DNA of 62,976 nucleotides, filler included, from Octopus bimaculoides (taxonomy: Eukaryota): NCBI RefSeq assembly GCF_001194135.2. It is 3 parts of 3 records of this genome, joined end to end, with 100 filler letters (N's around TTAATTAATTAA, not from the genome) between each part and the next. Parts side by side here need not be neighbours in the genome. Positions count along the whole stretch, not along the records: positions 43,269 to 62,976 come from NC_068981.1; 2 more parts are not named here. The stretch is one strand, 5' to 3'. Every line of letters begins with the position of its first letter. The first letter of the stretch is position 1. Positions 8,655-61,492 of the stretch are shown one piece after another. Position numbers and translations under genes: made by a program. A model generated the notes under the pieces. The model saw only the letters and a program-made list of their open reading frames with translations, was not told the origin of the DNA and did not search any database.

Positions 8655-8979
8655 ATACTCTTTACTCTTTTACACTTTTATTTGTTTCGGTTATTTGACT
8701 GCGGCCATGCTGAAACACCTCCTTTAGTCGAACAAATCGACCCAAGGACTTATTCTTTGTCAGCCTAGTATTTATTCTGTCAGTCAATTTTGCCGAACCG
8801 CTAAGTTACGGGGATGTAGATACACCAACAAGCGATGGTGAGGGGACAAATCCACTCATAAAATTTGGTCGGCCCGTGTCTATAGTAGAAGACACTTTCC
8901 CAAGGTGCTACGCAGTGGAACTGAGCCCGGAACCATGTGGTTGGGAAGCAAACTTCTTACCACACAACCACTCCTGCGC
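8655..8979 (-). mobile_element. SINE family A with internal deletion (GGAAGCAA.CTTCT head variant)
   Basis: Tail and head are present but the central microsatellite block is missing. The head has ggaagcaaacttct at 8944-8957. Confidence 0.8.
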
Positions 8980-44633: not shown

Positions 44634-45548
44634 NNNNNNNNNNNNNNNNNNNNNNNNNNNNNNNNNNNNNNNNNNNNNNNNNNNNNNNNNNNNNNNNNNN
44701 NNNNNNNNNNNNNNNNNNNNNNNNNNNNNNNNNNNNNNNNNNNNNNNNNNNNNNNNNNNNNNNNNNNNNNNNNNNNNNNNNNNNNNNNNNNNNNNNNNNN
44801 NNNNNNNNNNNNNNNNNNNNNNNNNNNNNNNNNNNNNNNNNNNNNNNNNNNNNNNNNNNNNNNNNNNNNNNNNNNNNNNNNNNNNNNNNNNNNNNNNNNN
44901 NNNNNNNNNNNNNNNNNNNNNNNNNNNNNNNNNNNNNNNNNNNNNNNNNNNNNNNNNNNNNNNNNNNNNNNNNNNNNNNNNNNNNNNNNNNNNNNNNNNN
45001 NNNNNNNNNNNNNNNNNNNNNNNNNNNNNNNNNNNNNNNNNNNNNNNNNNNNNNNNNNNNNNNNNNNNNNNNNNNNNNNNNNNNNNNNNNNNNNNNNNNN
45101 NNNNNNNNNNNNNNNNNNNNNNNNNNNNNNNNNNNNNNNNNNNNNNNNNNNNNNNNNNNNNNNNNNNNNNNNNNNNNNNNNNNNNNNNNNNNNNNNNNNN
45201 NNNNNNNNNNNNNNNNNNNNNNNNNNNNNNNNNNNNNNNNNNNNNNNNNNNNNNNNNNNNNNNNNNNNNNNNNNNNNNNNNNNNNNNNNNNNNNNNNNNN
45301 NNNNNNNNNNNNNNNNNNNNNNNNNNNNNNNNNNNNNNNNNNNNNNNNNNNNNNNNNNNNNNNNNNNNNNNNNNNNNNNNNNNNNNNNNNNNNNNNNNNN
45401 NNNNNNNNNNNNNNNNNNNNNNNNNNNNNNNNNNNNNNNNNNNNNNNNNNNNNNNNNNNNNNNNNNNNNNNNNNNNNNNNNNNNNNNNNNNNNNNNNNNN
45501 NNNNNNNNNNNNNNNNNNNNNNNNNNNNNNNNNNNNNNNNNNNNNNNN

Positions 45549-47299: not shown

Positions 47300-47480
47300 T
47301 GTTTCAAATCCTGGGACAAATTCCCAGCAAGTTCGGGGGTGGGGGGTAAGTCGATTATATCGACTCCATGTTCGACTGGTACTTACTTTATCGACCTTGA
47401 AAGGATGAAAGGTAAAGTCGACCTCGGCAGAATTTGAACTCAGAACGTAAAGGAGGACCAAATGCCGCTAAGGATTTTGC
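47300..47480 (-). mobile_element. SINE family B fragment
   Basis: Contains aagtcgattatatcgac..aaagtcgacctcggcagaatttgaactcagaacg. Confidence 0.8.
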
Positions 47481-48595: not shown

Positions 48596-49030
48596 CCAGT
48601 AGAGTTATTTTCATAATTTGTAAGATCCATTTTCTTATACATACATACAAACATATAAACACGCACACACACACATACACGAGGTATATNNNNNNNNNNN
48701 NNNNNNNNNNNNNNNNNNNNNNNNNNNNNNNNNNNNNNNNNNNNNNNNNNNNNNNNNNNNNNNNNNNNNNNNNNNNNNNNNNNNNNNNNNNNNNNNNNNN
48801 NNNNNNNNNNNNNNNNNNNNNNNNNNNNNNNNNNNNNNNNNNNNNNNNNNNNNNNNNNNNNNNNNNNNNNNNNNNNNNNNNNNNNNNNNNNNNNNNNNNN
48901 NNNNNNNNNNNNNNNNNNNNNNNNNNNNNNNNNNNNNNNNNNNNNNNNNNNNNNNNNNNNNNNNNNNNNNNNNNNNNNNNNNNNNNNNNNTATATATATA
49001 TATATATATCTTTCAAAAGATTTCACATTA

Positions 49031-49310
49031 ATGCCTAGTGGTTAGGGTATTCGGCTCACGATCAAAAGGTCGTGAGTTCAATTCCAGGCGACGCGTTGTG
49101 TCCTTAAGCAAGACACTTTATTTCACGTTGCTCCAGTCCACTCAGCTGGCAAAAATGAGTATTACCTGTATTTCAATGGGCCGGTCTTGTCACACTCTGT
49201 GTCACGCTGAATCTCGCCACTTGCGCGTTAATTTCACGAGTAGGCTGTTCCATTGATCTGATCAAATGGAACCCTTGTCGTCGTATCCAACAACGGAATG
49301 CCAGTTTTTT
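49031..49310 (+). mobile_element. tRNA-derived SINE sharing its 3' body with family C
   Basis: Head cctagtggttagggtattcggctcacgatc..gagttcaattcc, core gtgtccttaagcaagacactt, then cttgtcacactctgtgtcacgctgaat..gccacttgc as in 61330-61490. Confidence 0.8.
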
Positions 49311-49440
49311 AAAACATGTGTGTGTGTGTGTGTGTGTGCATGGATATGGATGTATATGCATATATGTATATATATGTATATATGTATCTATATATATATA
49401 TGTGTGCATGTGTATGGGTATGGATGTATATGTATATATG

Positions 49441-49479
<39 letters not shown>

Positions 49480-49554
49480 CTCTGTGTGTGTGTGCGTGTG
49501 TCTAACCCTGGATAACTGTAATTACAAGATTTGTGGTTTTATATTATTTTATTC

Positions 49555-49923
49555 TTATACTTGTTTCAGTAATTTGACTACGGCCATGCTGGAGCACCAC
49601 CTTTATTTGAACAAATCGACTCCTGGACTTATTCTTTGTAAGCCTTGTACTTATTCTATCGGTCTCTTTTGTTGAACCACTAGATTACGGGGACGCAAAC
49701 ACACCAATATCAGTTATCAAGCGATGGTGGGGGGACAAACACAGACACAAATAACAAACACACACATACATATACATATATATATACGACCGGCTTCTTT
49801 CAGTTTCCGTCTACCAAATCCACTCACAAGTCTTTGGTAGTCCCGAAGCTATAGTAGAAGGCACTTGCTTAAGTTGCCACGCAGTGGGGCTGAACCCGGA
49901 ACTATGTGATTGGTAAGCAAGCT
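49555..49923 (-). mobile_element. SINE family A, 3' part of the split copy
   Basis: Complete tail, microsatellite and B box; it stops at ..tggtaagcaagct. Confidence 0.9.
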
Positions 49924-51409
49924 CTTTTATTTCTTTTAAATTGCCATAAAGACATTACATAGAGGGTGACACTACAACACATATGGCGACATATGACAAT
50001 TAAAATAAAAATATGATGCTATGAATGACACATGAAAATGAACATGAAAAACATTAGAATCAAAATATTAAAATAATGATACATGAATGATAACTGAGAA
50101 ATGAGAATATGAAAAATGTGTTACTCACCCCACACTGAGTATCACTACTCGCCACCGCTGAGTCCTGAGTCCTCTTTAGTCTTTGATCTAGTCTTTCGTT
50201 TACCGTTTTCCCCATCGCTGAGTGACAACACTCTCCTCCATGTACACGTAACCCTTGTCACCGGGGAAGGGTCTTGCAAATTTTGTGGTGTCTATTCTTT
50301 CTTCTCTTTTTCCTGTGGGGAAAGGGGGTAGGTGGGTTTGGTGTCTGTATGGGAAAGGTGGGTCTGAGTGGTCTTAGGTGGGATGGAGTTGGTCTGGGGT
50401 TCCACGTCACAATGACTGTTCTTCCTCTTCTTTCTCTTTTTCCTTTTATTCTCTGTCACTGACCATTGATCCTCCTTGTTCCTTCCATCTATCTAAACTT
50501 CTTCCTTTTCTCCTCTGTCTCCACCACCGCTTCTGTTGTTTTCCTCTGCAGAGGACAGTGCGCTCTAGTTTGGCCCTTTTGGCCACATTTAAAACATCGT
50601 GAGATTCTGCCCTCCACCCACACTCTTAACACAATCTTTCCCAACGTCACCGTCTCCGCTAAACTCTCCAATTGCCTCTCCTCTACCTGTATAATGAAGT
50701 TTTTTCTCTCCATCCCCCGTTCTCCGTTTCCGTGGCTTGGAAGACAGCCACCTCCTCCTCACATCCGACGAGGACGACTGCCGCAACCCAAGCCACTACT
50801 ATATCGGGTGGAATTCCTTCTACCCTCACCTTAGAAGTCTTTCTTCCAAGGTACGTAGGTAGAAGTACCACTTCCTCCGTTTTTACAGTTGCACTCGCCA
50901 GCCTCTTTGCCTCCTCCGCTGTCCTAAGTTAGACAACCACCGTCCCATATCCATTTCCTTTCGCTATGTATGTCACTTCCTTCAAAATTGAAGGGGCCTT
51001 CAATGCTTTTTCTACCTTTTCCATCTCCATCCACTCCACCTTCCTAATCTCCACTGAGTACACCTTGTAGGTAATGGTCTTCTTTTCCATATTTTCCATA
51101 ACCCTTTTCGGGGGTAATAACTTTACGTCACCGCCCACCTTCTGTGTCATCTTACTCAGCTCCTTCATCTGGCTAGGTCCACCTCCCTTTTCTTCACCTT
51201 TGCAGCCTCAAGAAAACTCTTTACTCTTTCCAAATGCTCGTCCATTCTATTTACCGCCTTAATAAGCTCCTCCTCTGCTGAGGACAGCTCATACTTGCTA
51301 AGGTCTGAATACATTGTCTCTACCGGTATAACACCCGCTGCCAAGCAGCATAAGAAATTTCGTCCGACTTGTCAAAAATCAACACAGCGAATAGACCGAC
51401 GCATGCGCG
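49924..51409 (-). mobile_element. Gag/ORF1-only non-LTR-type element A (about 1.49 kb), no RT
   Basis: Bounded by AAGCAAGCT repeats, with AATAAA at the 3' end and a single decayed ORF1-like frame. Confidence 0.75.
50489..51314 (-). pseudogene. Element A gag/ORF1-like protein with a degenerate CCHC knuckle
   Basis: The ATG at 51314 (MYSDLSKYE..) is followed by a frameshift at about 51185, a stop at 50929 and a frameshift at about 50700. The joined protein reads KKTITYKVYS..GYGTVVV..TAEEA..LLPTYLGRK..VEGIPP..VEGRISRCFKCGQKGQTRAHCP. Confidence 0.75.
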
Positions 51410-51423
51410 GGAAGCAAGCTTCT

Positions 51424-53496
51424 TTATTTCATGAAATTTGCCATTTGGGCATTACAAAGATTAGCAGAAGCTAGGGATGGACAGAAACATTAATGACAAA
51501 ATGAGGATGACATAGATGAAAAATGAGAGGGGCACCGACGCCCACCGATCGGTAACCCCTCGAAAACCTTTGTTCACTATGGTTACAATTAATTTACAAT
51601 CACTAATCAATTTACAATCAATAATTCTCCATCAGCATCTCTGATGCTGCCATCAGGCAAGAGTCCATGTTGTAATCCACTTCGTTAGTAAAGTATAAAT
51701 AACTCATTTCATTGCAGGTGGCCTTGACCATGCTAATGGTAGTACGGGTAACCACCTCAGCGGCCACCTGCGGGGGCCATCTTGCTGCTGATGTGCATGC
51801 AGAAAAAGATTCAGGAGCCTTTCAACTTCCCTCCCCCTGATGTACAGGAGGATAATTTCCTCCTCAGAGGAGGAGGAGTCTTCTGACAGCGGCACCGTTC
51901 CCGCTGGCAGCTTCTCTTTCTCCGGAGGTGTCGCGGGTTCGGTTGGCGGCACAGTACTTTCCACCGACCGTCTCCCGTTTTTTTCTTTTTTCTGTTTTTT
52001 CTTCCTTTCTTCTGCAGGAGCTGGGGCCCCCATCGGCACACCCGAGTGACCCTCCTCTTCTCCCGCAGACTGTACTTTTACTGGTGAGCACCTTCCTTTT
52101 TCTTTTCGTGGAGGCGGAAGCCTCCACGACCCTCTCCATCTCTCCCAATGGGAGGGGAGCAGCGGGCACATTTTCCGTCACCTTCTCCGAAATTTTCCCA
52201 CGGCCCCAGGGGCAGTCCTTCCTAATGTGACCTGACTCCAGGCACTAGTGACACTTAGGAGGACGACCCTCAAGTATCAGTGGATACCTACAGCCAGCCA
52301 TTTTTAGGAAGTGTGGGAATACGATTTCGCCTGCGGCCGATGGCGTCCATAGGGTCAAAATTGCTTTTGCCCCTTCCCAATCAACAGCAGGCGTCATCCT
52401 CACATTTAAGAGCCTGGGCCCGCTATCTCCTAGGCCCTGCCGGATGGTATCACCGATCCATTCCGCTTCTGTACCTGGAGGTAGCCCACACACCCAGGCT
52501 CTTATCACCCTCCTCCCACAATAAATGGGGAGAAATAAAATTTCTTGCCCCTCAAGAGGCCTGCCTGCAAATTTGCCAGCTTCCTCGGGAGTACCAAACA
52601 GCAACCATACCGTTGCATATTTGGTCCCCCAAGAAATAAATTTTATAGTTGGCAGGTAGTCTGCTAACTCTTCTTCTATCACATTCTTGTCGAAGAGGGT
52701 GATGGCACCACGCGACCTGGAAAAGGTCCGTAGTACCACCGTCCTCTTCTCAAGATCTTTAATCCAATGTTTGGGTGGGACCACCTCCCACTCCAAAGCA
52801 GCGGTACTGTTTACTTTTGCCATGTACAAAAAGAAATAAGTCTTAAAAGTTCAAAGAAAGATCAAAGAAAAAAAGTCCAAAAGAAAAAAAATACACAAAC
52901 AGTTAACAGATCAGTAAAAAAAAAAATAAGACAAAGAAGTCCAAAAAATAAATAAACAGTTAAAAAAGAAAGAAAAATCAGGAAGGTAGACGGAGAAGTC
53001 CAAAGAAGTCCAAAAAATAAATAAACAGTTCAAAAAGAAAGAAAAAATCAGGAAGGTAGACGGAGAAAGAAAAACACAGCAAAAAATCCAATTTCCTGGC
53101 CAACAGGTACTCCCGGCCGAATGTGAATAGGGCCCTTGGCGTGAATCTTTTTTTTTTTTTTTCGGTAATTGGTAAAATAAATCCAATAAATCCAAACACG
53201 AATACAGGCTACTGCCAACGGTAACTGCAACGGCAACTGTATCAGGTTCTATTCATTCGGGCGCGGATACGCCCCCTTTTTCGAAACGAATCCATAGAAT
53301 CCGCAATATACAAAAACAGCAGCCACCGAGAGTAGGAGAAATTGTCCCAGAGCTGTACGGAATTTATTAACAAAAATTACACTTTAATGACTTACGCATA
53401 GCTCAGATAAAACAAAATCACCGACCTTCTCTGTTTTTGTTCTTTTTTCTTTTCAATGTACGTAGCGCAACAAACTCACGTTCATTCTGGTTCACC
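51424..53496 (-). mobile_element. Gag/ORF1-only non-LTR-type element B (about 2.07 kb), no RT
   Basis: Exact 14 bp direct repeats GGAAGCAAGCTTCT at 51410-51423 and 53497-53510; AATAAA at the 3' end; 5' UTR of about 670 nt. Confidence 0.8.
51704..52829 (-). pseudogene. Element B gag/ORF1-like protein with a CCHC knuckle
   Basis: ORF 52245-52829 continues in frame through one stop: LEGRPPKCH*CLESGHIRKDCP. It then has a K/E/P-rich tail, probably via a frameshift into ORF 51704-52171. Confidence 0.8.
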
Positions 53497-53498
53497 GG

Positions 53499-53535
53499 AA
53501 GCAAGCTTCTCAACATACAGTCACTCTTGCGCCTA
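53499..53535 (-). mobile_element. SINE family A, displaced 5' head of the split copy
   Basis: aagcaagcttctcaacatacagtcactcttgcgccta aligns to the intact head aagcaa.cttcttaccacaca.ccactcctgcgcc (8946-8979; also 36590-36621). Confidence 0.85.
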
Positions 53536-56500
53536 TATTTTAAGATTACATATATATAACATACAATTTTAGTCTCGCTATGAACAGTAAACGAAGTGAT
53601 TACATAGCAGGTTTTTATTTTTGTATTAGCAGAACACATATATCTTAAATCTGAAATTACCACTTAAATGCTGTGTAATATAATTAATAATCGTATATTA
53701 GAGAAATAGGGGAAGGAAAAGCAAGAAGTAAAGTAAAGAAATGAGAAGAAATAGAGAGAGGGGAAATAGGAGAAAGGAAAAGGGAAAGTATGTGTGTCTG
53801 AGAAAGAGAGAGAGAGAGAGAGAAGAAGGTGAAACTAAAGGATAGAGATAAAATGAAAAATGGTCATAGCTCTCAGCCCCAAACTTAGACATCTGTATTT
53901 CTTCATCTTCGAGACTGTTTCCTATAAAATAATGGTTTTGTGGGATTATTCAGGACGGGATGTTTGTTATGAAAATGTACTGGAGATTTTATAATTCATT
54001 CCCCTTACGTTAAAAACTAAGCGTCTTAGCAGAAGCAAGATAGTATGAAAGAGGCCAAACTTCAGAAGTTCATTGCATTCAAATGTGGCCATTTTATTGG
54101 AGACGTCAATATGACTTACAATAAAAAGTTTAATATGACCCATTAAGAATCAATGGACTGGTCTTACCTCGGCAACACACTAGGCTACAATCATTGAATA
54201 AAGTTTTGTTTAAAAAAAGAAATAAAATATTTTGCTGAACATACAAGATAAATCTGGAATGAAAATATTCTCACACGTTGACTGATACATCTAAAATAAT
54301 AGGTTCTTTTGTTACAAGTTTTCTTTCAACCCTGCTGGATACAGGTGAATATTTTAGAATATTTTAACACAAAACACGAGGTCATGAGATTTTAAAAAAT
54401 ACCGTCTGCATAGGAAATGAGTCAAGCATGTGGATTAAAAGGTAAACATATATACTTTGAATACATTTTTATAAATTCTTGTTGGTTTTCAGGTGGGATC
54501 AAGGTGAAGTCATAAAACTGGCAGATTTCACTGTTTAAGCTCAAAACTTTATATTCATAATCACCAGTCGATTTTGGTATACATTTCCTTCCAACAATCG
54601 TAATATTTCAGGTCCTTAACATATGTTCAGAACTGTGAAGTACTAAGTCAATTTTGTGGGCATGAATATTGAAGTGCGCACAAAATTGATTGAATCATAT
54701 GGAAACAAAGCACACGAGTTACATTTAAAACATGGCTACAATCGAAAATTTTTACGAGGTGCATTAAAAAGTTCCTGAGGTTTATTCGTAATATTGTACT
54801 GAGATAAACATCAGAGATGCTTTATTCCACGCAAAACCTTCAGCGTCTACTCAGAGGTATGTTGCAATGCTGGAAACCCATCCGTATTGTCAGCAGGCAC
54901 CTCAGGGTCACAAGATTATCGCCCCTTAACCTGAGTGGTGCAGCGACAACTGAGCTTGTTTTCACCAACCAAAGGGTTCCACTCTTATCGACCATTTTGA
55001 GCTAATTTCAGCTACGGTGTCTATTTCCTGGGTGGCTTTCTTCAGCAGTCTGGGTTCCAGACCTATCTTCTGCAGGAAATAGCGCAATGATATAAGATGG
55101 AGTCACGGCAGTCGATTTCAATGCGGAATGTAGTCAGATGCTAGCCCTTAACATGCGGCCTCATATGTCAACAAATTGTTGTTTGGTATCCTTTGCAATA
55201 TACTATATATACTGTATTTTGAAATACAGAATAATTTCTTCTGTATATTTTGGAACACAGTATACACTATTTCGATTATCTCTCTTAAAACTTTGTCATA
55301 AGCGATGTATTTTGCTATGTAACTGAAGTTAATTATAGAACACGGTGTGTATTATTTTTATTTTATTTTATCCTAAATATGAAAAATTTATTCACTACTG
55401 GCTGGGATGACTATTACTCAGGTGGAATAAGCTGGGAATGATAATTCTGCAGCTGAAGTAGGCTGAGGTGACAATTCTTCAGGTGGCCATTTTGGGATGA
55501 CAACCTTTCAGGCGATCCAAGATCAAATTCGCTTCTCACTGCATGTCTCCATTTAATGTTAATAATTTCACTTTCAGATTTTTTTCCCTTCTTTCATGAG
55601 TTGAGAAGAATTATTATTACCACTAATGACTTTTCTCTTCATTATCAGCGTAATTTCAAGTGATAAAATGTCTATGTTAGCACACATTTAACTTTACGTT
55701 TTTCATACAGAAAGTGTCCTTGAGAAATTTTCTTGTTATGTATAGTACATTGTCTTGGAAAAAGGTACAAAGCAAATGAAAGACGGAAGTTTAAGTGGAT
55801 AAAGTATAGAGTTTTGTGAATTGGATAGTATATTAACGCTAGTAGCAATAAAAATAAGTGATAGAAGCGTTAGCAACAATAGGATCCGAAAAAACTACAG
55901 ATGGCCGACATTGACAGAGAGAATAAACATTTGTTGTGAGGAAGTAGTAAGGTCTAACGTTTCGACCAGAAAATTAGTCGGATAGACAAGTTAAGTTTTC
56001 TGTAGATACATAAATAAATTGGGAGTAAATATAGAATATAATTGACAATGATTAAGATATCGAAAGAGTAAGAGCTTATCTGTCTCACCAAAAACTTGAA
56101 TGCCGTCTATTATGTGTGCAATAGTGGTGAGTGCATCATCTTAGATGTAAACAGTTGGTTATGAAGAGGAAATCCAATAACTTTAGAGCTAGTTTTATTT
56201 TGTCAAGAAGAGTATACAACTTCTATTACGAATCGTTTTATGATTTTAGGCCAACAGCCTGTATGAAAGAGTAATAATTTCAGTTATTTTTTTTAATACG
56301 CACAGACACAAAACCTAATGTTGGTCTCCTGCGGTTTATGGTATTTGGTACAGTTGAATATGAATTGTTATTAGAGCTAGGTAAAAAAGTTATTGCTGCG
56401 GTAGTTTAACCCCAGGCATATGATAAAGGGCATTCTTGCTGTATCCATCCCCTCTTTTTTTTTTTTCAAATAGGTTTACATTATCAAAAGTGAACTTTCT

Positions 56501-57492
56501 TTTTTTAAAGACAGTAGAGTGTCACTTGAGAGACATTTGGCTGCTATTTCAAACGAATATCTTAATTGCAAAAATAAAGCGAAACTTAGGAATGACCAAC
56601 TAATATCACATTTTCTTGTAATCTAAGTATGCATCTGCAACAAGGAAGCATAACAAATTACTTACTTACGTTACAACCGTCCTAACTGCATTATATCTCC
56701 ACCCCTCGGACAAACCAATGCACAAGGACACTTATTTATTTTTTTATTGACAGCATATCACAAAACACAGATTAGCACAGGATCCCTCGATTCGTGCCAC
56801 GCCAGAAACAACTGTTTAACATGTCTACGCCTTAAGACGGCACTGCCTTACATTTATCAACAGAGAAGAATTAGACAACGAAAGAAATTATTTTAATATC
56901 TCATGGCGATATCAGACACGCTAAAACAATATATGGAGAAAGAAAGAAATTATCTGTTTATGCCGTTCCCATTATTATATTTTGTATAGTTGAAATTAAG
57001 ATTTAAAATAGCACCAAGCATCACTAAAAGGAGTGAAGATAACGGACCACACCGAATTACACTAATAGAGGGGGTGAAAACACCAAAATGATTGTTAATA
57101 AAATTGACGTGCAGTGCTTATAATAAAAAATAATTTATTATATCTTATACTTTATATATAATAACTATTATTTGCGTATTTGCTCTAACATGTCTAGGTA
57201 GGTTCAGACGCAAATATGCTGTTCGCTGTGGTGTACGTCATTGGAGAATAATTTCTCGTATGACGTACGCTCTTTTAACGACGTCAGTGTGCATTCTAGG
57301 ATACGACGACAGTGTGCATACGACGACAGTCTGCATTCTAGGATCCCATTGTTTCGATATGTGTCTCATCAGCCAGAAGTAGCCTAAACTCTGAACCTAA
57401 CGATTAAAAAAAAATATATATGTAACATTCTATATATNNNNNNNNNNNNNNNNNNNNNNNNNNNNNNNNNNNNNNNNNNNNNNNNNTATATG

Positions 57493-58270: not shown

Positions 58271-58708
58271 AATAACATACCGTTACATATGTGTATGTAT
58301 GTGTAGATGTGTGTATGTTTAATAACGTACCTAACGCGGAAAGAACACACTGAGACATACACACTCATACACTTACACTCACAGATACACAGTCATATAC
58401 AAAATGTGATATCGTTGTCGTTGTGGTATAAAATGTCCTGTTGACAGTAGAAAGATTATCTCTATGAAATATTATATCGTTTTAATCGAAATGAAAATAA
58501 TGGAAATGAAAATAAAATTTCGTATTGACACTGACCATCCCTCATATAGATATAGTATGTTTAATGACGTACCTAACGTAGAAAAAATACATACAGTGAG
58601 ACATATACACACTCATACCCTCACACGCATACATTCACAGACAGATACACAGTCATATACAAAATGTGACGTCGTCGTCAGTCGTCACATATGTATATGT
58701 ATGTATTG

Positions 58709-58744
<36 letters not shown>

Positions 58745-59070
58745 AATAACGTACCGTTACATATGTATATGTATGTGTAGATGTATGTTTAATAACGTAC
58801 CTAACGCGGAAAGACACACACACGATGAGATATATACACATTCATACACTTACACACATACACTCACAGACAAATACACAGTCATATACAAAATGTGATG
58901 TTGTTGTCGTTGTGGTATAAAATGTCCTGTTGACAATAGAAAGATTGTTTTAATTGAAATGAAAATAAAATTTCGCATTGACACTTACCAACCCTCACAT
59001 ATATATGTTTAATAACGTACCTAACGCGTAAAGACACACTCACTGTGAGACATATACACACTCATACACT
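58268..59070. repeat. Hierarchical tandem duplication (unit of about 474 bp containing subunits of about 230-250 bp)
   Basis: 58268-58740 recurs from 58742. The sub-motif tttaat.acgtacctaacg..gaga.ata.acac.tcatac occurs four times. Confidence 0.9.
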
Positions 59071-59079
59071 TAGAATATA

Positions 59080-59161
59080 AAAGAGTCAGAACAGAACAGA
59101 ACAAAGAGTCAGAACAGAACAGAACAAAGAGTCAGAACAGAACAGAACAAAGAGTCAGAAC
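59080..59161. repeat. 23 bp minisatellite (aaagagtcagaacagaacagaac) x3.5
   Basis: Directly visible. Confidence 0.95.
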
Positions 59162-60331
59162 ATTTATTAAGACACTATCGACTCTGCCAGTTTCCGCCTA
59201 AGCAGTGCGCGTGTTTTTATTGGAATAATTACCTTCTCAAATTATAGTAAAATTACATGGTTAATAAAAAGCTATATATAAAATGTAGACTTAATCCATA
59301 TGTGTCTTATGCAACAATAAAATTTAACATTAAAGACAAAAATTTAAAACTTATTCGTCAACGTATTTACTTCAAAGTATAATGCTTTCTAACTAAATTT
59401 TACTTGATATGTAAATGCACATTCATTTATATTTTGGATGTGATCTTTTACTTTTAATGTGTCATTTTAATTTTGCTAGTTGTTTATGTCACTATTAGTG
59501 CTATTTTATTTAGTAATATGTGGGAGTTACAATTTTCGATCACTACAGTTTCCCTAAGGCCTAGTTCGAGTAGAGCATGGCAATATTTTGTGAGACATGG
59601 GTAACTTTAGAATGGTGTGTAAATAAGTGATTAACTGTAATTAAAACTTCTTTTCTGAATATATATCTTCTATATACTAACCTTATCAGTGGGGTGCATG
59701 CTGTTTTGGAAAATCGAAGAGAAGCGTGGGGCAAAAACGGTTGAGAAGCACTGGACTTGTATTAGAGGAAACTAATGGTTAGTATTAACACCATATGTTA
59801 CAGTACTGACACCAATTTTTCTGAGGCCATTAAGGAACAATATAAATGCAAAAAGACGATATCTGTCAGTTAAGATTACACATACTTTAGACATACTTTT
59901 GGGAAAACTTGTGAAGATCTTTATTTAAAGCAAATATATAATGATCATAGGAAATATGTGTCAATTACTTTTGTATTGGAATATATTTTTAGCCTTCCAA
60001 AACTAGCTGATTGAGAACCTATACAAGCTTAATACGCGAAGTATTATAATTTTGAATTAGTAGGCTCGTTCAATTAAAATAGTAAATCTATACAGTAACT
60101 CTGAATTAATCGTTCAAAATTATTTCTGTATAATAATGTATTTTATAAATATTCCCTGACAGCTATATTTAGTTGAATGGTTCCCACGATATGATCACTT
60201 TTCCCCAGAAAAATTACATAACAACAGAATTAAATATGTGTTCACAATTAATTTGTAAATTAATTACGTGAAATAGCCTCATGAAAGAACTAGAAAAGCA
60301 TTAACTATAAATATTATAAAAATGATTATAA

Positions 60332-60509
60332 TTTCAAATTTTGGTACAAGGCTAGCAAGTTCGGGAGAATGGGTAAGTCGATTACATCAACCCTAGTGCG
60401 CAACTGGTACTTATTTTATCGACCCCGAAAGGCAAAGTCGACCTCGGTGGAATTTGAACTCAGAACACAAAGACAGACGAAATGCCGTTAAGCATTTTAC
60501 CTGGCGTGC

Positions 60510-61110: not shown

Positions 61111-61492
61111 GGAGGCGCAATGGCCCAGTGGTTAGGGCAGCGGACTTGCGGTCATAGGATCGCGGTTTCGATTCCCAGACCGGGCGTTGTGAGTGTTTAT
61201 TGAGCGAAAAATCACCTAAAGCTCCACGAGGCTCCGGCAGGGGATGGTGGCGAACCCTGCTGTACTCTTTCACCACAACTTTCTCTCATTCTTACTTCCT
61301 GTTTCTGTCGTACCTGTAATTCAAAGGGTCAGCCTTGTCACACTGTGTCACGCTGAATATCCCCGAGAACTACGTTAAGGGTACACGTGTCTGTGGAGTG
61401 CTCAGCCACTTGCACGTTAATTTCACGAACAGGCTGTTCCGTTGATCGGATCAACTGGAACTCTCGACGTCGTAAGCGACGGAGTGCCAACA
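61111..61492 (+). mobile_element. SINE family C, full length (tRNA-derived)
   Basis: A box tggcccagtgg, B box ggtttcgattccc, long unique body, and (aac) tail. Confidence 0.85.

What the first reader, a model, noticed from the sequence alone, without database searches (positions are those of the whole stretch)
49555..53535. Two gag-only elements stacked in the same site of one SINE head: candidate SINE-targeting, sequence-specific non-autonomous retroelement system
Seen: a family-A SINE is cut after ..gtaagcaagct (49923), and its missing head resumes 3.6 kb away at 53499-53535. Between them lie elements A and B, head to tail and in the SINE's orientation. The core AAGCAAGCT occurs at all three junctions (49915, 51412, 53499). 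The 14-mer GGAAGCAAGCTTCT is exact at 51410 and 53497 and matches an intact SINE head 13/14 (8944-8957). Established: Tx1-clade LINEs include target-specific members (U2 snRNA, 5S rDNA, other transposons), and specific elements can stack at a regenerated target. Inference: two successive TPRT insertions each duplicated the same target between the SINE A and B boxes. That makes a high-copy SINE the dedicated safe-harbour target. I do not know of this being described in cephalopods but cannot check.
Basis: partly seen in the sequence, partly recalled or inferred. Interest (0 to 1): 0.92.

Follow-up and report, generated by a model that had tools for sequence, protein, structure and literature searches.

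The report
Gag-only retroelements targeting a SINE head
Two decayed retrotransposons that encode only a gag-like RNA-binding protein sit head to tail at the same 9-12-bp spot inside one octopus SINE, and relatives in other octopus genomes use that same spot, so this is a site-specific, helper-dependent retroelement family whose landing pad is another mobile element.

Summary
Everything lies on the minus strand, in this order:
- SINE head
- element B (2.07 kb)
- a second copy of AAGCTTGCTT(CC)
- element A (1.49 kb)
- a third copy of AGCTTGCTT, continuing in register into the rest of the SINE.

A and B encode only a decayed ORF1/gag (two RRM-like domains plus a CCHC knuckle). The piece holds no endonuclease or reverse transcriptase.

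Related DNA from public octopod assemblies gave three results:
- The same SINE-head position is the 5' junction of a B-like element in Octopus sinensis. It is also the 5' junction of an A-like element on a contig assembled from sequencing reads.
- Another gag-only relative sits in the head of a different SINE with a 16-bp target duplication.
- The gag is the ORF1 of full-length LINEs (APE endonuclease, RT, zf-RVT). Their closest named relative is Xenopus Tx1, and they share the last ~70 nt with the gag-only elements.

Best reading: these are non-autonomous, gag-only derivatives of Tx1-like LINEs. They are mobilised in trans and inserted sequence-specifically between the A and B boxes of an abundant SINE. 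The duplicated target allows stacking.

The kind is known (target-specific Tx1-type elements, tandem insertions sandwiching a duplication). The SINE-head target and the gag-only passengers look new. No genome-wide census was possible.

The parts
53497..53535 (-). 5' head of the interrupted SINE ('SINE-A'). It contains an A-box-like TGACTGTATGT (53523..53513) and ends in ..GAGAAGCTTGCTTCC.
   Evidence: It aligns with intact SINE-A heads from L004 and L008.
53499..53508 (-). Target copy 1, AAGCTTGCTT, followed by CC at 53498-53497.
51422..53496 (-). Element B, a 2.07-kb gag-only non-LTR retroelement. Its 5' end is (CC)GGTGAACCAGAATGAACGTGAG and its 3' end is ..AATGGCAAATTTCATGAAATAAAG.
   Evidence: No EN/RT similarity. 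Its closest relative is O. sinensis LOC115225585, at 58-64% aa identity.
51864..52823 (-). Element B gag/ORF1 reading frame: two RRM-like domains plus a CCHC knuckle. One in-frame TAG at 52245-52247 lies inside the knuckle.
   Evidence: The fold of the intact relative P0001 matches tandem-RRM proteins.
52932..53067 (-). 69-bp tandem duplication (2 copies, 97% matches) in the 5' UTR of element B.
51410..51421 (-). Target copy 2, AAGCTTGCTT plus CC, sandwiched between the 3' end of B and the 5' end of A.
49924..51409 (-). Element A, a 1.49-kb gag-only non-LTR retroelement. Its 5' end is (CC)CGCGCATGCGTCGG and its 3' end is ..TTTATGGCAATTTAAAAGAAATAAAAG.
   Evidence: No EN/RT similarity. 75-80% aa identity to P0002 and P0003.
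50263..51314 (-). Element A gag/ORF1 remnant. It is spread over three frames (at least 3 frameshifts, several stops). The CCHC knuckle CFKCGQKGQTRAHC is still readable.
   Evidence: It is homologous to B gag (23% identity, E 8e-18) and to the ORF1 of the L003 LINE.
49915..49923 (-). Target copy 3, AGCTTGCTT, continuous with the SINE remainder (..ACCAATCAC..).
49552..49923 (-). Remainder of SINE-A: B box GGTTCAGCCCC at 49896..49886, then body and A/T-rich tail. The 3' limit is approximate.
   Evidence: It matches SINE-A copies in L002, L004 and L008.
49924..49998 (-). 3' tail of element A. It belongs to the tail family shared with full-length LINEs (block ..TTGTAGTGTC.CCCTCT.TGT...TTATGG...AAATAAAG).
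   Evidence: Alignment of eight tails.
51422..51496 (-). 3' tail of element B. Its last 38 nt are 76% identical to the tail of A. Apart from the shared 14-mer at the 5' junctions, this is the only DNA-level similarity between A and B.

Best explanation
A and B are members of two diverged families of non-autonomous, gag-only (ORF1-only) non-LTR retroelements. They derive from an octopod lineage of Tx1-like (L1-group) LINEs.

Shown:
- Each encodes only an ORF1p-type RNA-binding protein with two RRM-like domains and a CCHC knuckle.
- Each ends in the conserved 3' tail of that LINE lineage.
- Each is flanked by a copy of the same 9-12-bp stretch, AGCTTGCTT(CC). That stretch lies between the A box and the B box of a tRNA-like SINE head.
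- The same position of the same SINE family is the 5' junction of related elements in at least two other loci or species.

Inferred:
- The element RNA is bound in trans, through the shared 3' tail, by the ORF2 protein (APE endonuclease plus RT) of an autonomous partner LINE.
- That endonuclease nicks the SINE-head sequence at ..AG^(A)AGCTTGCTT, on one strand only. This fixes the orientation.
- Reverse transcription is primed from the nick.
- Second-strand cleavage 9-12 bp downstream duplicates the site.
- The recognised core lies inside the duplication, so each insertion leaves usable targets on both sides of itself. A second element can then land in one of them, giving the B-duplication-A stack.
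- A is the more decayed element and was probably first.
- The insertion separates the SINE's A and B boxes, so it very likely inactivates that SINE copy.

Both elements in the window are dead copies.
For: Anatomy and triple target copy.

Gag-only content:
- No EN/RT similarity in the whole piece.
- The A and B gags are homologous (E 8e-18).
- The model of the intact relative P0001 (pLDDT 78) matches tandem-RRM proteins, and there is a weak zf-CCHC hit.

The gag is a LINE ORF1:
- In L003 (O. vulgaris) and L005 (O. sinensis) it lies directly upstream of an ORF2 with Exo_endo_phos, RVT_1 and zf-RVT.
- That ORF2 scores 307 bits (31% over 777 aa) against Xenopus Tx1 ORF2, and 211 bits against human L1 ORF2p.

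Shared 3' tail between gag-only elements and full LINEs.

Gag-only architecture recurs without ORF2 in L001, L002, L004, L006, L008, L009 and L005 copy 1, with intact ORFs of 281, 242 and 379 aa.

Site recurrence:
- L001..GGTAAGTAGCTTGCTTCC|TGTGCATGCG.
- L010-12..GTGGCTGCATGGTAAAAAAAACTTGCTTCC|GGTATAGCG.
- All junctions are in register with the window junctions and with intact SINE-A heads.
- The intact site occurs about 5 times in 121 kb of sampled octopod DNA. A random insertion therefore hits that exact position with probability of about 4e-5.
- All eight occurrences of AGCTTGCTT in the sample are SINE-A or junction copies.

A clean second example of insertion into a SINE head: L004 has a 16-bp duplication AAAYGTTAGCACGCCG and an intact copy of that SINE nearby.

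Precedent: Tx1-clade elements target other transposons, and tandem insertions sandwich a duplication (PMC4494074; PMC4640811).
Against: - Only four junctions at the SINE-A site were seen. Two of them are in the window itself.
- Only the window shows the 3' side. L001 has lost its 3' part and the L010 contig ends too early.
- No autonomous LINE with the exact A or B tail, or sitting in the SINE-A site, was found.
- Related families use other targets: the SINE-B head in L004, and an unidentified site with duplication TGCTGGGTTCG in L008.
- Stacks of relatives (L003, L005, L006, L009) show no recognisable target remnant at their junctions. Stacking in this clade may therefore have a further cause.
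- It is unresolved whether the invariant CC at all four 5' junctions is SINE-derived or element-derived.
- Rfam detects no tRNA in the SINE heads, so the A and B boxes are read by eye.
- Tx1-clade placement rests on pairwise scores, not a phylogeny.
Confidence: 0.75

Rival explanations
1. The SINE head is carried along rather than targeted. Transcription of a donor copy starts at the SINE's own start site, so the 38-nt head becomes a 5' module of the transcript and is retrotransposed with the element. This resembles how small-RNA-derived sequences are added to the 5' ends of SINEs. On this view the heads seen in L001 and L010 are transduced, not evidence of repeated targeting.
For: - In L001 and L010 only the 5' side is visible, and each head starts at SINE position 1 with an unrelated upstream flank.
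- Co-transcription with the target is known for R2. It has also been proposed for SINEU elements lying in Mariner-N4_AMi (PMC4494074).
- All four 5' junctions end in the same CC.
Against: - In the window, A has no head of its own, only the 12-nt duplicate, and its 3' end runs in register into the SINE remainder with the B box.
- B is followed by the duplicate, not by random DNA.
- L004 shows both halves of the other SINE with a 16-bp duplication.
- The heads differ from one another where SINE-A copies differ from one another (GAGAAGC / AAGTAGC / AAAAAAC). This fits independent SINE copies.
- Even this model needs one site-specific event to place B inside the head in front of A.
Confidence: 0.1
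2. There is no SINE specificity as such. The clade tends to insert next to resident relatives, either by tail-directed or microhomology-directed priming or through a very short nick-site preference such as AG^R. The window stack is one more such stack that happened to start in a SINE.
For: - Head-to-tail stacks of relatives without a visible target remnant occur in L003, L005, L006 and L009. They include a 60-nt truncated tail stacked on another tail.
- Element tails end in ..AG, and the target has ..AG just 5' of the nick in the window and in L004.
- SINEs make up a large share of octopus repeats (PMC8967140).
Against: - It does not explain why L001 and L010, which are unstacked, sit at the identical nucleotide of the same SINE family in the same orientation. 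The chance is about 4e-5 per event.
- It does not explain why a 10-12-nt copy of the site lies between B and A.
Confidence: 0.1
3. The arrangement is an assembly artefact or a recombination product. Two separate SINE copies, each with one insert, would have been joined through the shared short repeat.
For: The piece comes from a gapped assembly: N runs at 44634-45548, 48690-48990 and 57438-57486.
Against: - There are no gaps between 49300 and 53800.
- The shared repeat is only 12-14 nt, too short to collapse reads or to drive homologous recombination.
- The same junction type is seen in independent assemblies of other species.
Confidence: 0.03

Closest known systems
Tx1-Mar LINEs and SINEU-3 in crocodilians (Kojima 2015, PMC4494074); Tx1L in Tx1D of Xenopus
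   Same: - These are APE-type L1-group elements with sequence-specific insertion into another transposon.
- A non-autonomous passenger shares the target.
- The duplication has a defined sequence.
- Tandem insertions sandwich a copy of the duplication.
- The full-length octopod relatives score best against Xenopus Tx1 ORF2 among named proteins.
   Different: - The target here is the tRNA-like head of a SINE, between the A and B boxes, not a DNA transposon.
- The passengers are 1.5-2 kb protein-coding gag-only elements, not small-RNA-headed SINEs.
- The host is an octopod.
- The autonomous partner with this target has not been identified.
HAL1 (half-L1) of mammals
   Same: A non-autonomous LINE derivative that keeps ORF1, has lost ORF2, and amplifies as a family. 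Its existence is stated from my own knowledge; the papers were only listed by title and abstract.
   Different: - HAL1 inserts like L1, without sequence specificity.
- Its ORF1p is the coiled-coil/RRM/CTD type, not two RRMs plus a CCHC knuckle.
HeT-A / TART telomeric retrotransposons of Drosophila
   Same: A gag-only element (HeT-A) depends on the reverse transcriptase of a partner. It goes to one class of site and forms head-to-tail arrays. This is stated from my own knowledge.
   Different: They belong to the Jockey clade. Targeting is to chromosome ends through Gag localisation, not to an internal DNA sequence cut by an endonuclease, and there are no target duplications.
R1/R2 and other rDNA-, snRNA- or tRNA-gene-specific non-LTR elements (Keno, Utopia, NeSL-1_TV, LIN15/25_SM); Dada DNA transposons
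   Same: They insert at one defined position of a multicopy small-RNA-type sequence, which is read as a low-cost landing site (PMC4640811; PMC3706591, title and abstract only).
   Different: Those targets are functional host genes. Here the target is a parasitic tRNA-derived SINE, so the insertion harms another transposon rather than a host gene copy.

Membership tests
Tx1 clade (L1 group) non-LTR retrotransposons | ORF2 with an N-terminal APE-type endonuclease, RT and a C-terminal zinc finger | tested here: not met
   A and B have no ORF2 at all. They can only be derivatives or passengers, not members in the autonomous sense. Full-length relatives whose ORF1 is homologous to the A and B gag (L003, L005) do have Exo_endo_phos, RVT_1 and zf-RVT.
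Tx1 clade (L1 group) non-LTR retrotransposons | RT domain groups with Tx1 elements in a phylogeny | tested here: inconclusive
   No tree was built. Pairwise, L003 ORF2 scores 307 bits (31% over 777 aa) against Xenopus Tx1 ORF2 and 211 bits against human L1 ORF2p. The only descriptively named hits in the homology search are 'transposon TX1 149 kDa protein'.
Target-specific non-LTR retrotransposon (criterion of Kojima 2015: the same sequence in more than 20% of flanks) | A large fraction of copies is flanked by the same target sequence at the same position and in the same orientation | tested here: inconclusive
   All four evaluable 5' junctions at SINE-A heads (A, B, L001, L010) lie at the same nucleotide. 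The sample is tiny and no genome-wide count was possible. More distant relatives behave differently: L004 sits in another SINE, L008's target is unidentified, and L002's flank is unclear.
Target-specific non-LTR retrotransposon | A target-site duplication of defined sequence brackets the element | tested here: met
   In the window, AAGCTTGCTT(CC) / AAGCTTGCTT(CC) / AGCTTGCTT bracket B and A. L004 has a 16-bp duplication with 1 mismatch. L008 has an 11-bp duplication.
ORF1-only non-autonomous LINE derivatives (HAL1-like) | The element keeps ORF1 and the LINE termini, lacks ORF2, and exists as a multi-copy family | tested here: met
   ORF1-only copies occur in the window (two), L001, L002, L004, L005 copy 1, L006 (three), L008 and L009. 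The 3' tail is shared with full LINEs. The gag superfamily has 604 homologues at E<=1e-3, the best ones from octopods.
ORF1-only non-autonomous LINE derivatives (HAL1-like) | An identifiable parent or partner LINE of the same subfamily | tested here: not met
   The nearest full-length LINE ORF1 is only 37% identical to the A gag and 27% to the B gag. No LINE with the A or B tail was seen.
LINE ORF1p with RRM plus CCHC knuckle | RRM fold(s) followed by a CX2CX4HX4C knuckle, encoded upstream of ORF2 | tested here: met
   The AlphaFold model of P0001 (pLDDT 78) gives tandem-RRM hits: NONO/SFPQ and hnRNP A1 UP1, Foldseek E about 1e-5. The knuckle is visible in A, B and relatives. The position upstream of ORF2 is seen in L003 and L005.
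tRNA-derived SINE (the target) | A head with Pol III A and B boxes derived from a tRNA | tested here: inconclusive
   An A-box-like TGGCTGTGTGG and a B box GGTTCAGTCCC are read by eye in intact copies. Rfam finds no tRNA match even at E<=10 and ARAGORN finds none. That it is a multi-copy repeat is shown.

The most novel reading that the evidence does not exclude
Octopods may harbour a guild of ORF1-only retroelements, with as yet unidentified Tx1-like helpers, that home to one position in the anticodon-like stem-loop of their most abundant SINE families. Different lineages would have switched between different SINE heads. Each insertion splits the SINE's A and B boxes. The system would then be transposon-on-transposon parasitism that silences SINE source copies while giving the invader a practically unlimited, harmless set of landing pads. 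The gag-only elements would be a third trophic level: a parasite of the LINE that lives inside the LINE's other parasite.
Probability: 0.3. Interest if true: 0.7.

Novelty: new variant of a known kind. Interest (0 to 1): 0.55.

Why it matters
Sequence-specific LINE-type integration is of interest both for genome evolution and as a natural model for targeted DNA insertion.

Known targets are rRNA, snRNA, tRNA and 5S genes, spliced-leader exons, microsatellites, telomeric repeats, DNA transposons and LTR elements. A SINE head was not found as a target in the literature I could search.

In octopuses, SINEs are the largest repeat class (PMC8967140). A family that lands inside them and breaks their promoter could influence SINE dynamics. 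It would also give a dense set of phylogenetic insertion markers.

The gag-only architecture recurs with intact ORFs in several species. This raises the question of why a non-autonomous element keeps its own ORF1p.

The claim can be tested directly by a census in the chromosome-level octopod assemblies.

Tried and rejected
- Exact-protein look-ups of the window's B ORF and of P0033 and P0012 found nothing.
- Word-indexed homology searches returned only 1 and 5 gag hits. The exhaustive profile search was needed.
- Pfam on ten long gag homologues showed no EN/RT fusions.
- L001 has the SINE head at its 5' junction, but no SINE remainder within 7 kb downstream. Homology to B stops near L001 6975, so the 3' part is lost and its 3' junction cannot be tested.
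- L002 (O. bimaculoides, A-like fragment) has no recognisable SINE-A head at its 5' side. The copy is old and interrupted, so I left it unscored.
- A short-word BLAST with the A and B tails found no further copies in the window or the loci and produced only noise. A stricter run found tails of the related LINE lineage only.
- Rfam and ARAGORN do not recognise the SINE heads as tRNA.
- Single-strand folding of the target region shows a small anticodon-like hairpin that is no more stable than shuffled sequence. I make no structural claim for target recognition.
- The L008 target (duplication TGCTGGGTTCG) could not be identified as a repeat in the sample.
- L004 11263-11271 is a SINE-A copy that starts exactly at the site, but it showed no element or head upstream.
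- Literature searches found no description of a SINE-targeting LINE or of these octopod families. Repbase and Dfam are not available here.


Full report
**Observation.** The piece is cephalopod-like DNA rich in microsatellites and SINEs. On the + strand, AAGCAAGCT occurs only three times, at 49915, 51412 and 53499. Shuffles expect 0.10, and none of 100 reaches three. The 14-mer GGAAGCAAGCTTCT is exact at 51410 and 53497.

Read on the minus strand, the region is:
- a SINE head, AGGCGCAAGAGTGACTGTATGTTGAGAAGCTTGCTTCC (53534..53497)
- element B (53496..51422, ending ..CATGAAATAAAG)
- AAGCTTGCTTCC (51421..51410)
- element A (51409..49924, starting CGCGCATGCG and ending ..AAGAAATAAAAG)
- AGCTTGCTTACCAATCACATAGTTCCGGGTTCAGCCCCACTGCG.., the rest of the SINE down to about 49552.

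Joining the two SINE parts through one copy of the repeat gives a continuous element. It aligns in register with uninterrupted copies from other octopod loci. The site lies between an A-box-like TG(A/G)CTGT(A/G)TG(T/G) and the B box GGTTCAG(C/T)CCC.

**What the inserts are.** A and B each carry one gene.
- Translation shows a protein of about 250-320 aa that ends in a CX2CX4HX4C knuckle.
- The two proteins are homologous: 23% identity, E 8e-18.
- At the DNA level the elements share only the last 38 nt, plus the shared 14-mer at their 5' junctions.
- B's frame is broken by a single TAG inside the knuckle.
- A's frame is broken by at least three frameshifts and several stops.
- Nothing in the 19.7-kb piece resembles an endonuclease or a reverse transcriptase.
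- An AlphaFold model of the intact O. sinensis relative P0001 (pLDDT 78) has two beta-alpha-beta-beta-alpha-beta units. Its best PDB matches are tandem-RRM proteins: NONO/SFPQ and hnRNP A1 UP1.

**Relatives.** An exhaustive profile search found 604 homologues at E<=1e-3. The best-scoring ones that carry a source name come from Octopus sinensis, O. vulgaris, O. bimaculoides and Argonauta hians. I fetched the DNA around nine of them.
- In L003 (O. vulgaris) and L005 (O. sinensis) the gag homologue is ORF1 of a full-length LINE. Its ORF2 has Exo_endo_phos, RVT_1 and zf-RVT domains.
- That ORF2 scores 307 bits (31% over 777 aa, including the C-terminal zinc finger) against Xenopus Tx1 ORF2. It scores 211 bits against human L1 ORF2p. 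Tx1 proteins are the only descriptively named hits. This places the lineage in the L1 group, probably the Tx1 clade, but no tree was made.
- In L001, L002, L004, L006, L008, L009 and the first unit of L005 there is gag but no ORF2 within several kb.
- Several of these gag ORFs are intact: 281, 242 and 379 aa.
- The last ~70 nt of gag-only elements and full LINEs align (..TGTCCCC..TGT.TTGTA.TGTCCC.CTCTT.GT..GCCCCTTGTGGGTAATAAAGAAAT..). A and B are diverged members of this tail family.

Gag-only elements are therefore a real, recurrent class that shares the 3' recognition end of autonomous LINEs. They are not two accidental deletions.

**Is the SINE site a target?** The loci were chosen by protein homology only, so their flanks are unbiased.
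- L001 (O. sinensis, gag 58-64% identical to B) reads ..ATAGGCTGAGGCATGGCTGTGTGGTAAGTAGCTTGCTTCC|TGTGCATGCGTTG...
- L010-12 is one contig recovered from three sequencing runs, with a gag about 41% identical to A. It reads ..GCGTGGCTGCATGGTAAAAAAAACTTGCTTCC|GGTATAGCGTTTCG...
- Together with the two window junctions, that makes four 5' junctions, from three gag families and at least two species besides the window's. All are at the same nucleotide of the same SINE head and in the same orientation.
- In 121 kb of sampled octopod DNA the intact site occurs about five times. A random insertion would hit it with probability of about 4e-5.
- All occurrences of AGCTTGCTT in the sample are in SINE-A copies or at these junctions.
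- The sequence just upstream of the site differs between loci (GAGAAGC, AAGTAGC, AAAAAAC), as SINE copies differ.
- L004 (O. sinensis, gag 46% identical to A) gives an independent, complete example in another SINE family. It reads ..GGCAG|AAACGTTAGCACGCCG|TGTTTGAC.. element ..AAAGAAATCAG|AAATGTTAGCACGCCG|GGCGAAATGCTTAGC... That is a 16-bp duplication, and an intact copy of that SINE lies 200 bp away.
- L008 (O. vulgaris) has an 11-bp duplication, TGCTGGGTTCG, in a sequence I could not identify.

Target choice thus differs between lineages, as in the Tx1 clade generally (PMC4494074).

**Mechanism.** The shown parts are the anatomy, the gag-only content, the shared tail, the duplications and the recurrence of the site.

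The inferred parts are these:
- A partner ORF2 protein binds the shared tail.
- It nicks ..AG^(A)AGCTTGCTT on one strand and primes reverse transcription.
- The second strand is cut 9-12 bp downstream.

The recognised core lies inside the duplication, so targets are regenerated on both sides of an insert. A second element can use one of them, which produces B-duplicate-A. Kojima described the same 'tandem insertions sandwiching a TSD' for SINEU-3 in Mariner-N4_AMi (PMC4494074). A is more decayed than B, so A probably came first and B then used the upstream duplicate. The reverse order is not excluded.

The CC after GCTT is present at all four 5' junctions. Intact SINE copies have CC, CT or AC there. 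It may be SINE sequence (duplication of 11-12 bp, with one later substitution in the window's third copy). It may instead be the elements' own first two bases (duplication of 9-10 bp). I could not decide between these.

**Rivals.**
- Transduction of the SINE head with the element would explain L001 and L010. It would not explain the window's 3' junctions or L004.
- A general tendency of this clade to stack is real. Examples are L003 (three 99.4%-identical copies), L005 (a gag-only unit plus three LINEs of different subfamilies), L006 (three gag-only units and a truncated tail on a tail) and L009. It is unexplained where no target remnant is visible. It cannot account for solitary elements at the identical SINE position.
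- Misassembly is unlikely. There is no gap in 49300-53800, and a 12-14-nt repeat is too short to cause a false join.

**Comparison and novelty.** The kind is known: APE-type, Tx1-like, target-specific retroelements with non-autonomous passengers. ORF1-only derivatives (HAL1) and gag-only, site-restricted HeT-A are also known; I state the latter two from my own knowledge.

Two things appear new here. The first is the target, the promoter-bearing head of a SINE. The second is that the passengers at that target are protein-coding gag-only elements from several diverged families.

L1-Tx1 elements and a dominant SINE load are reported for octopuses (PMC8967140). I found no paper describing this association. 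Repbase and Dfam could not be checked, so prior annotation is possible.

I rate it a new variant of a known kind, with interest 0.55. A genome-wide census is the decisive test and is easy to run.

Noticed in passing
L003 1-11026; L005 1-14850; L006 250-4500; L009 6400-8400: Head-to-tail stacks are pervasive in this LINE/gag-only clade. L003 has three 99.4%-identical full LINEs with a period of 5279 bp. L005 has a gag-only unit followed by three full LINEs of different subfamilies. L006 has three gag-only units plus a 60-nt truncated tail sitting directly on another tail. No target remnant is recognisable at these junctions, so how these stacks form is unexplained.
   Followed up: partly
L004 11263-11271 (minus strand): A SINE-A copy begins exactly at AGCTTGCTT, the same position as the insertion site. 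It is preceded by non-SINE DNA (..GGCAATATATAA|AGCTTGCTTCCCAACC), with no SINE head or gag upstream. It may be the relic of an old insertion followed by a deletion.
   Followed up: partly
L002 5524 (minus strand); L004 3165 (plus strand): Short 5'-truncated LINE tails (..CCCCTTGTGGGTAATAAAGAAAT) lie inside copies of the second SINE family, at other positions and in other orientations. One has a 16-bp duplication GGTATTTAACCYAGCT. The sample is too small to say whether this is a preference or simply reflects SINE abundance.
   Followed up: no
window 52932-53067: A 69-bp tandem duplication (2 copies, 97% matches) lies in the A/T-rich 5' UTR of element B.
   Followed up: no
window 58300-59070 and 59080-59162: A satellite-like array with units of about 220-260 bp is followed by a perfect 23-bp x 3.6 tandem repeat (AAAGAGTCAGAACAGAACAGAAC).
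   Followed up: no
window 47407-47478 and 60427-60498; 49216-49285 and 61405-61474: The piece holds copies of two further interspersed repeat families, at 85-87% identity. The first pair is the second SINE family (SINE-B) in reverse orientation.
   Followed up: no
window 44634-45548, 48690-48990, 57438-57486: Runs of N (assembly gaps) are flanked by CA/TA microsatellites. The long 'ORFs' listed across them are artefacts.
   Followed up: yes
L001 5490-5510 versus window 51409-51390: The B-like element of O. sinensis starts with (CC)TGTGCATGCGTTG. This resembles the 5' end of the window's element A, (CC)CGCGCATGCGTCGG, rather than that of B, (CC)GGTGAACC. B's 5' end resembles that of the L010 element, (CC)GGTATAGCG. 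The 5' ends and the gag genes therefore seem to be shuffled between families.
   Followed up: no
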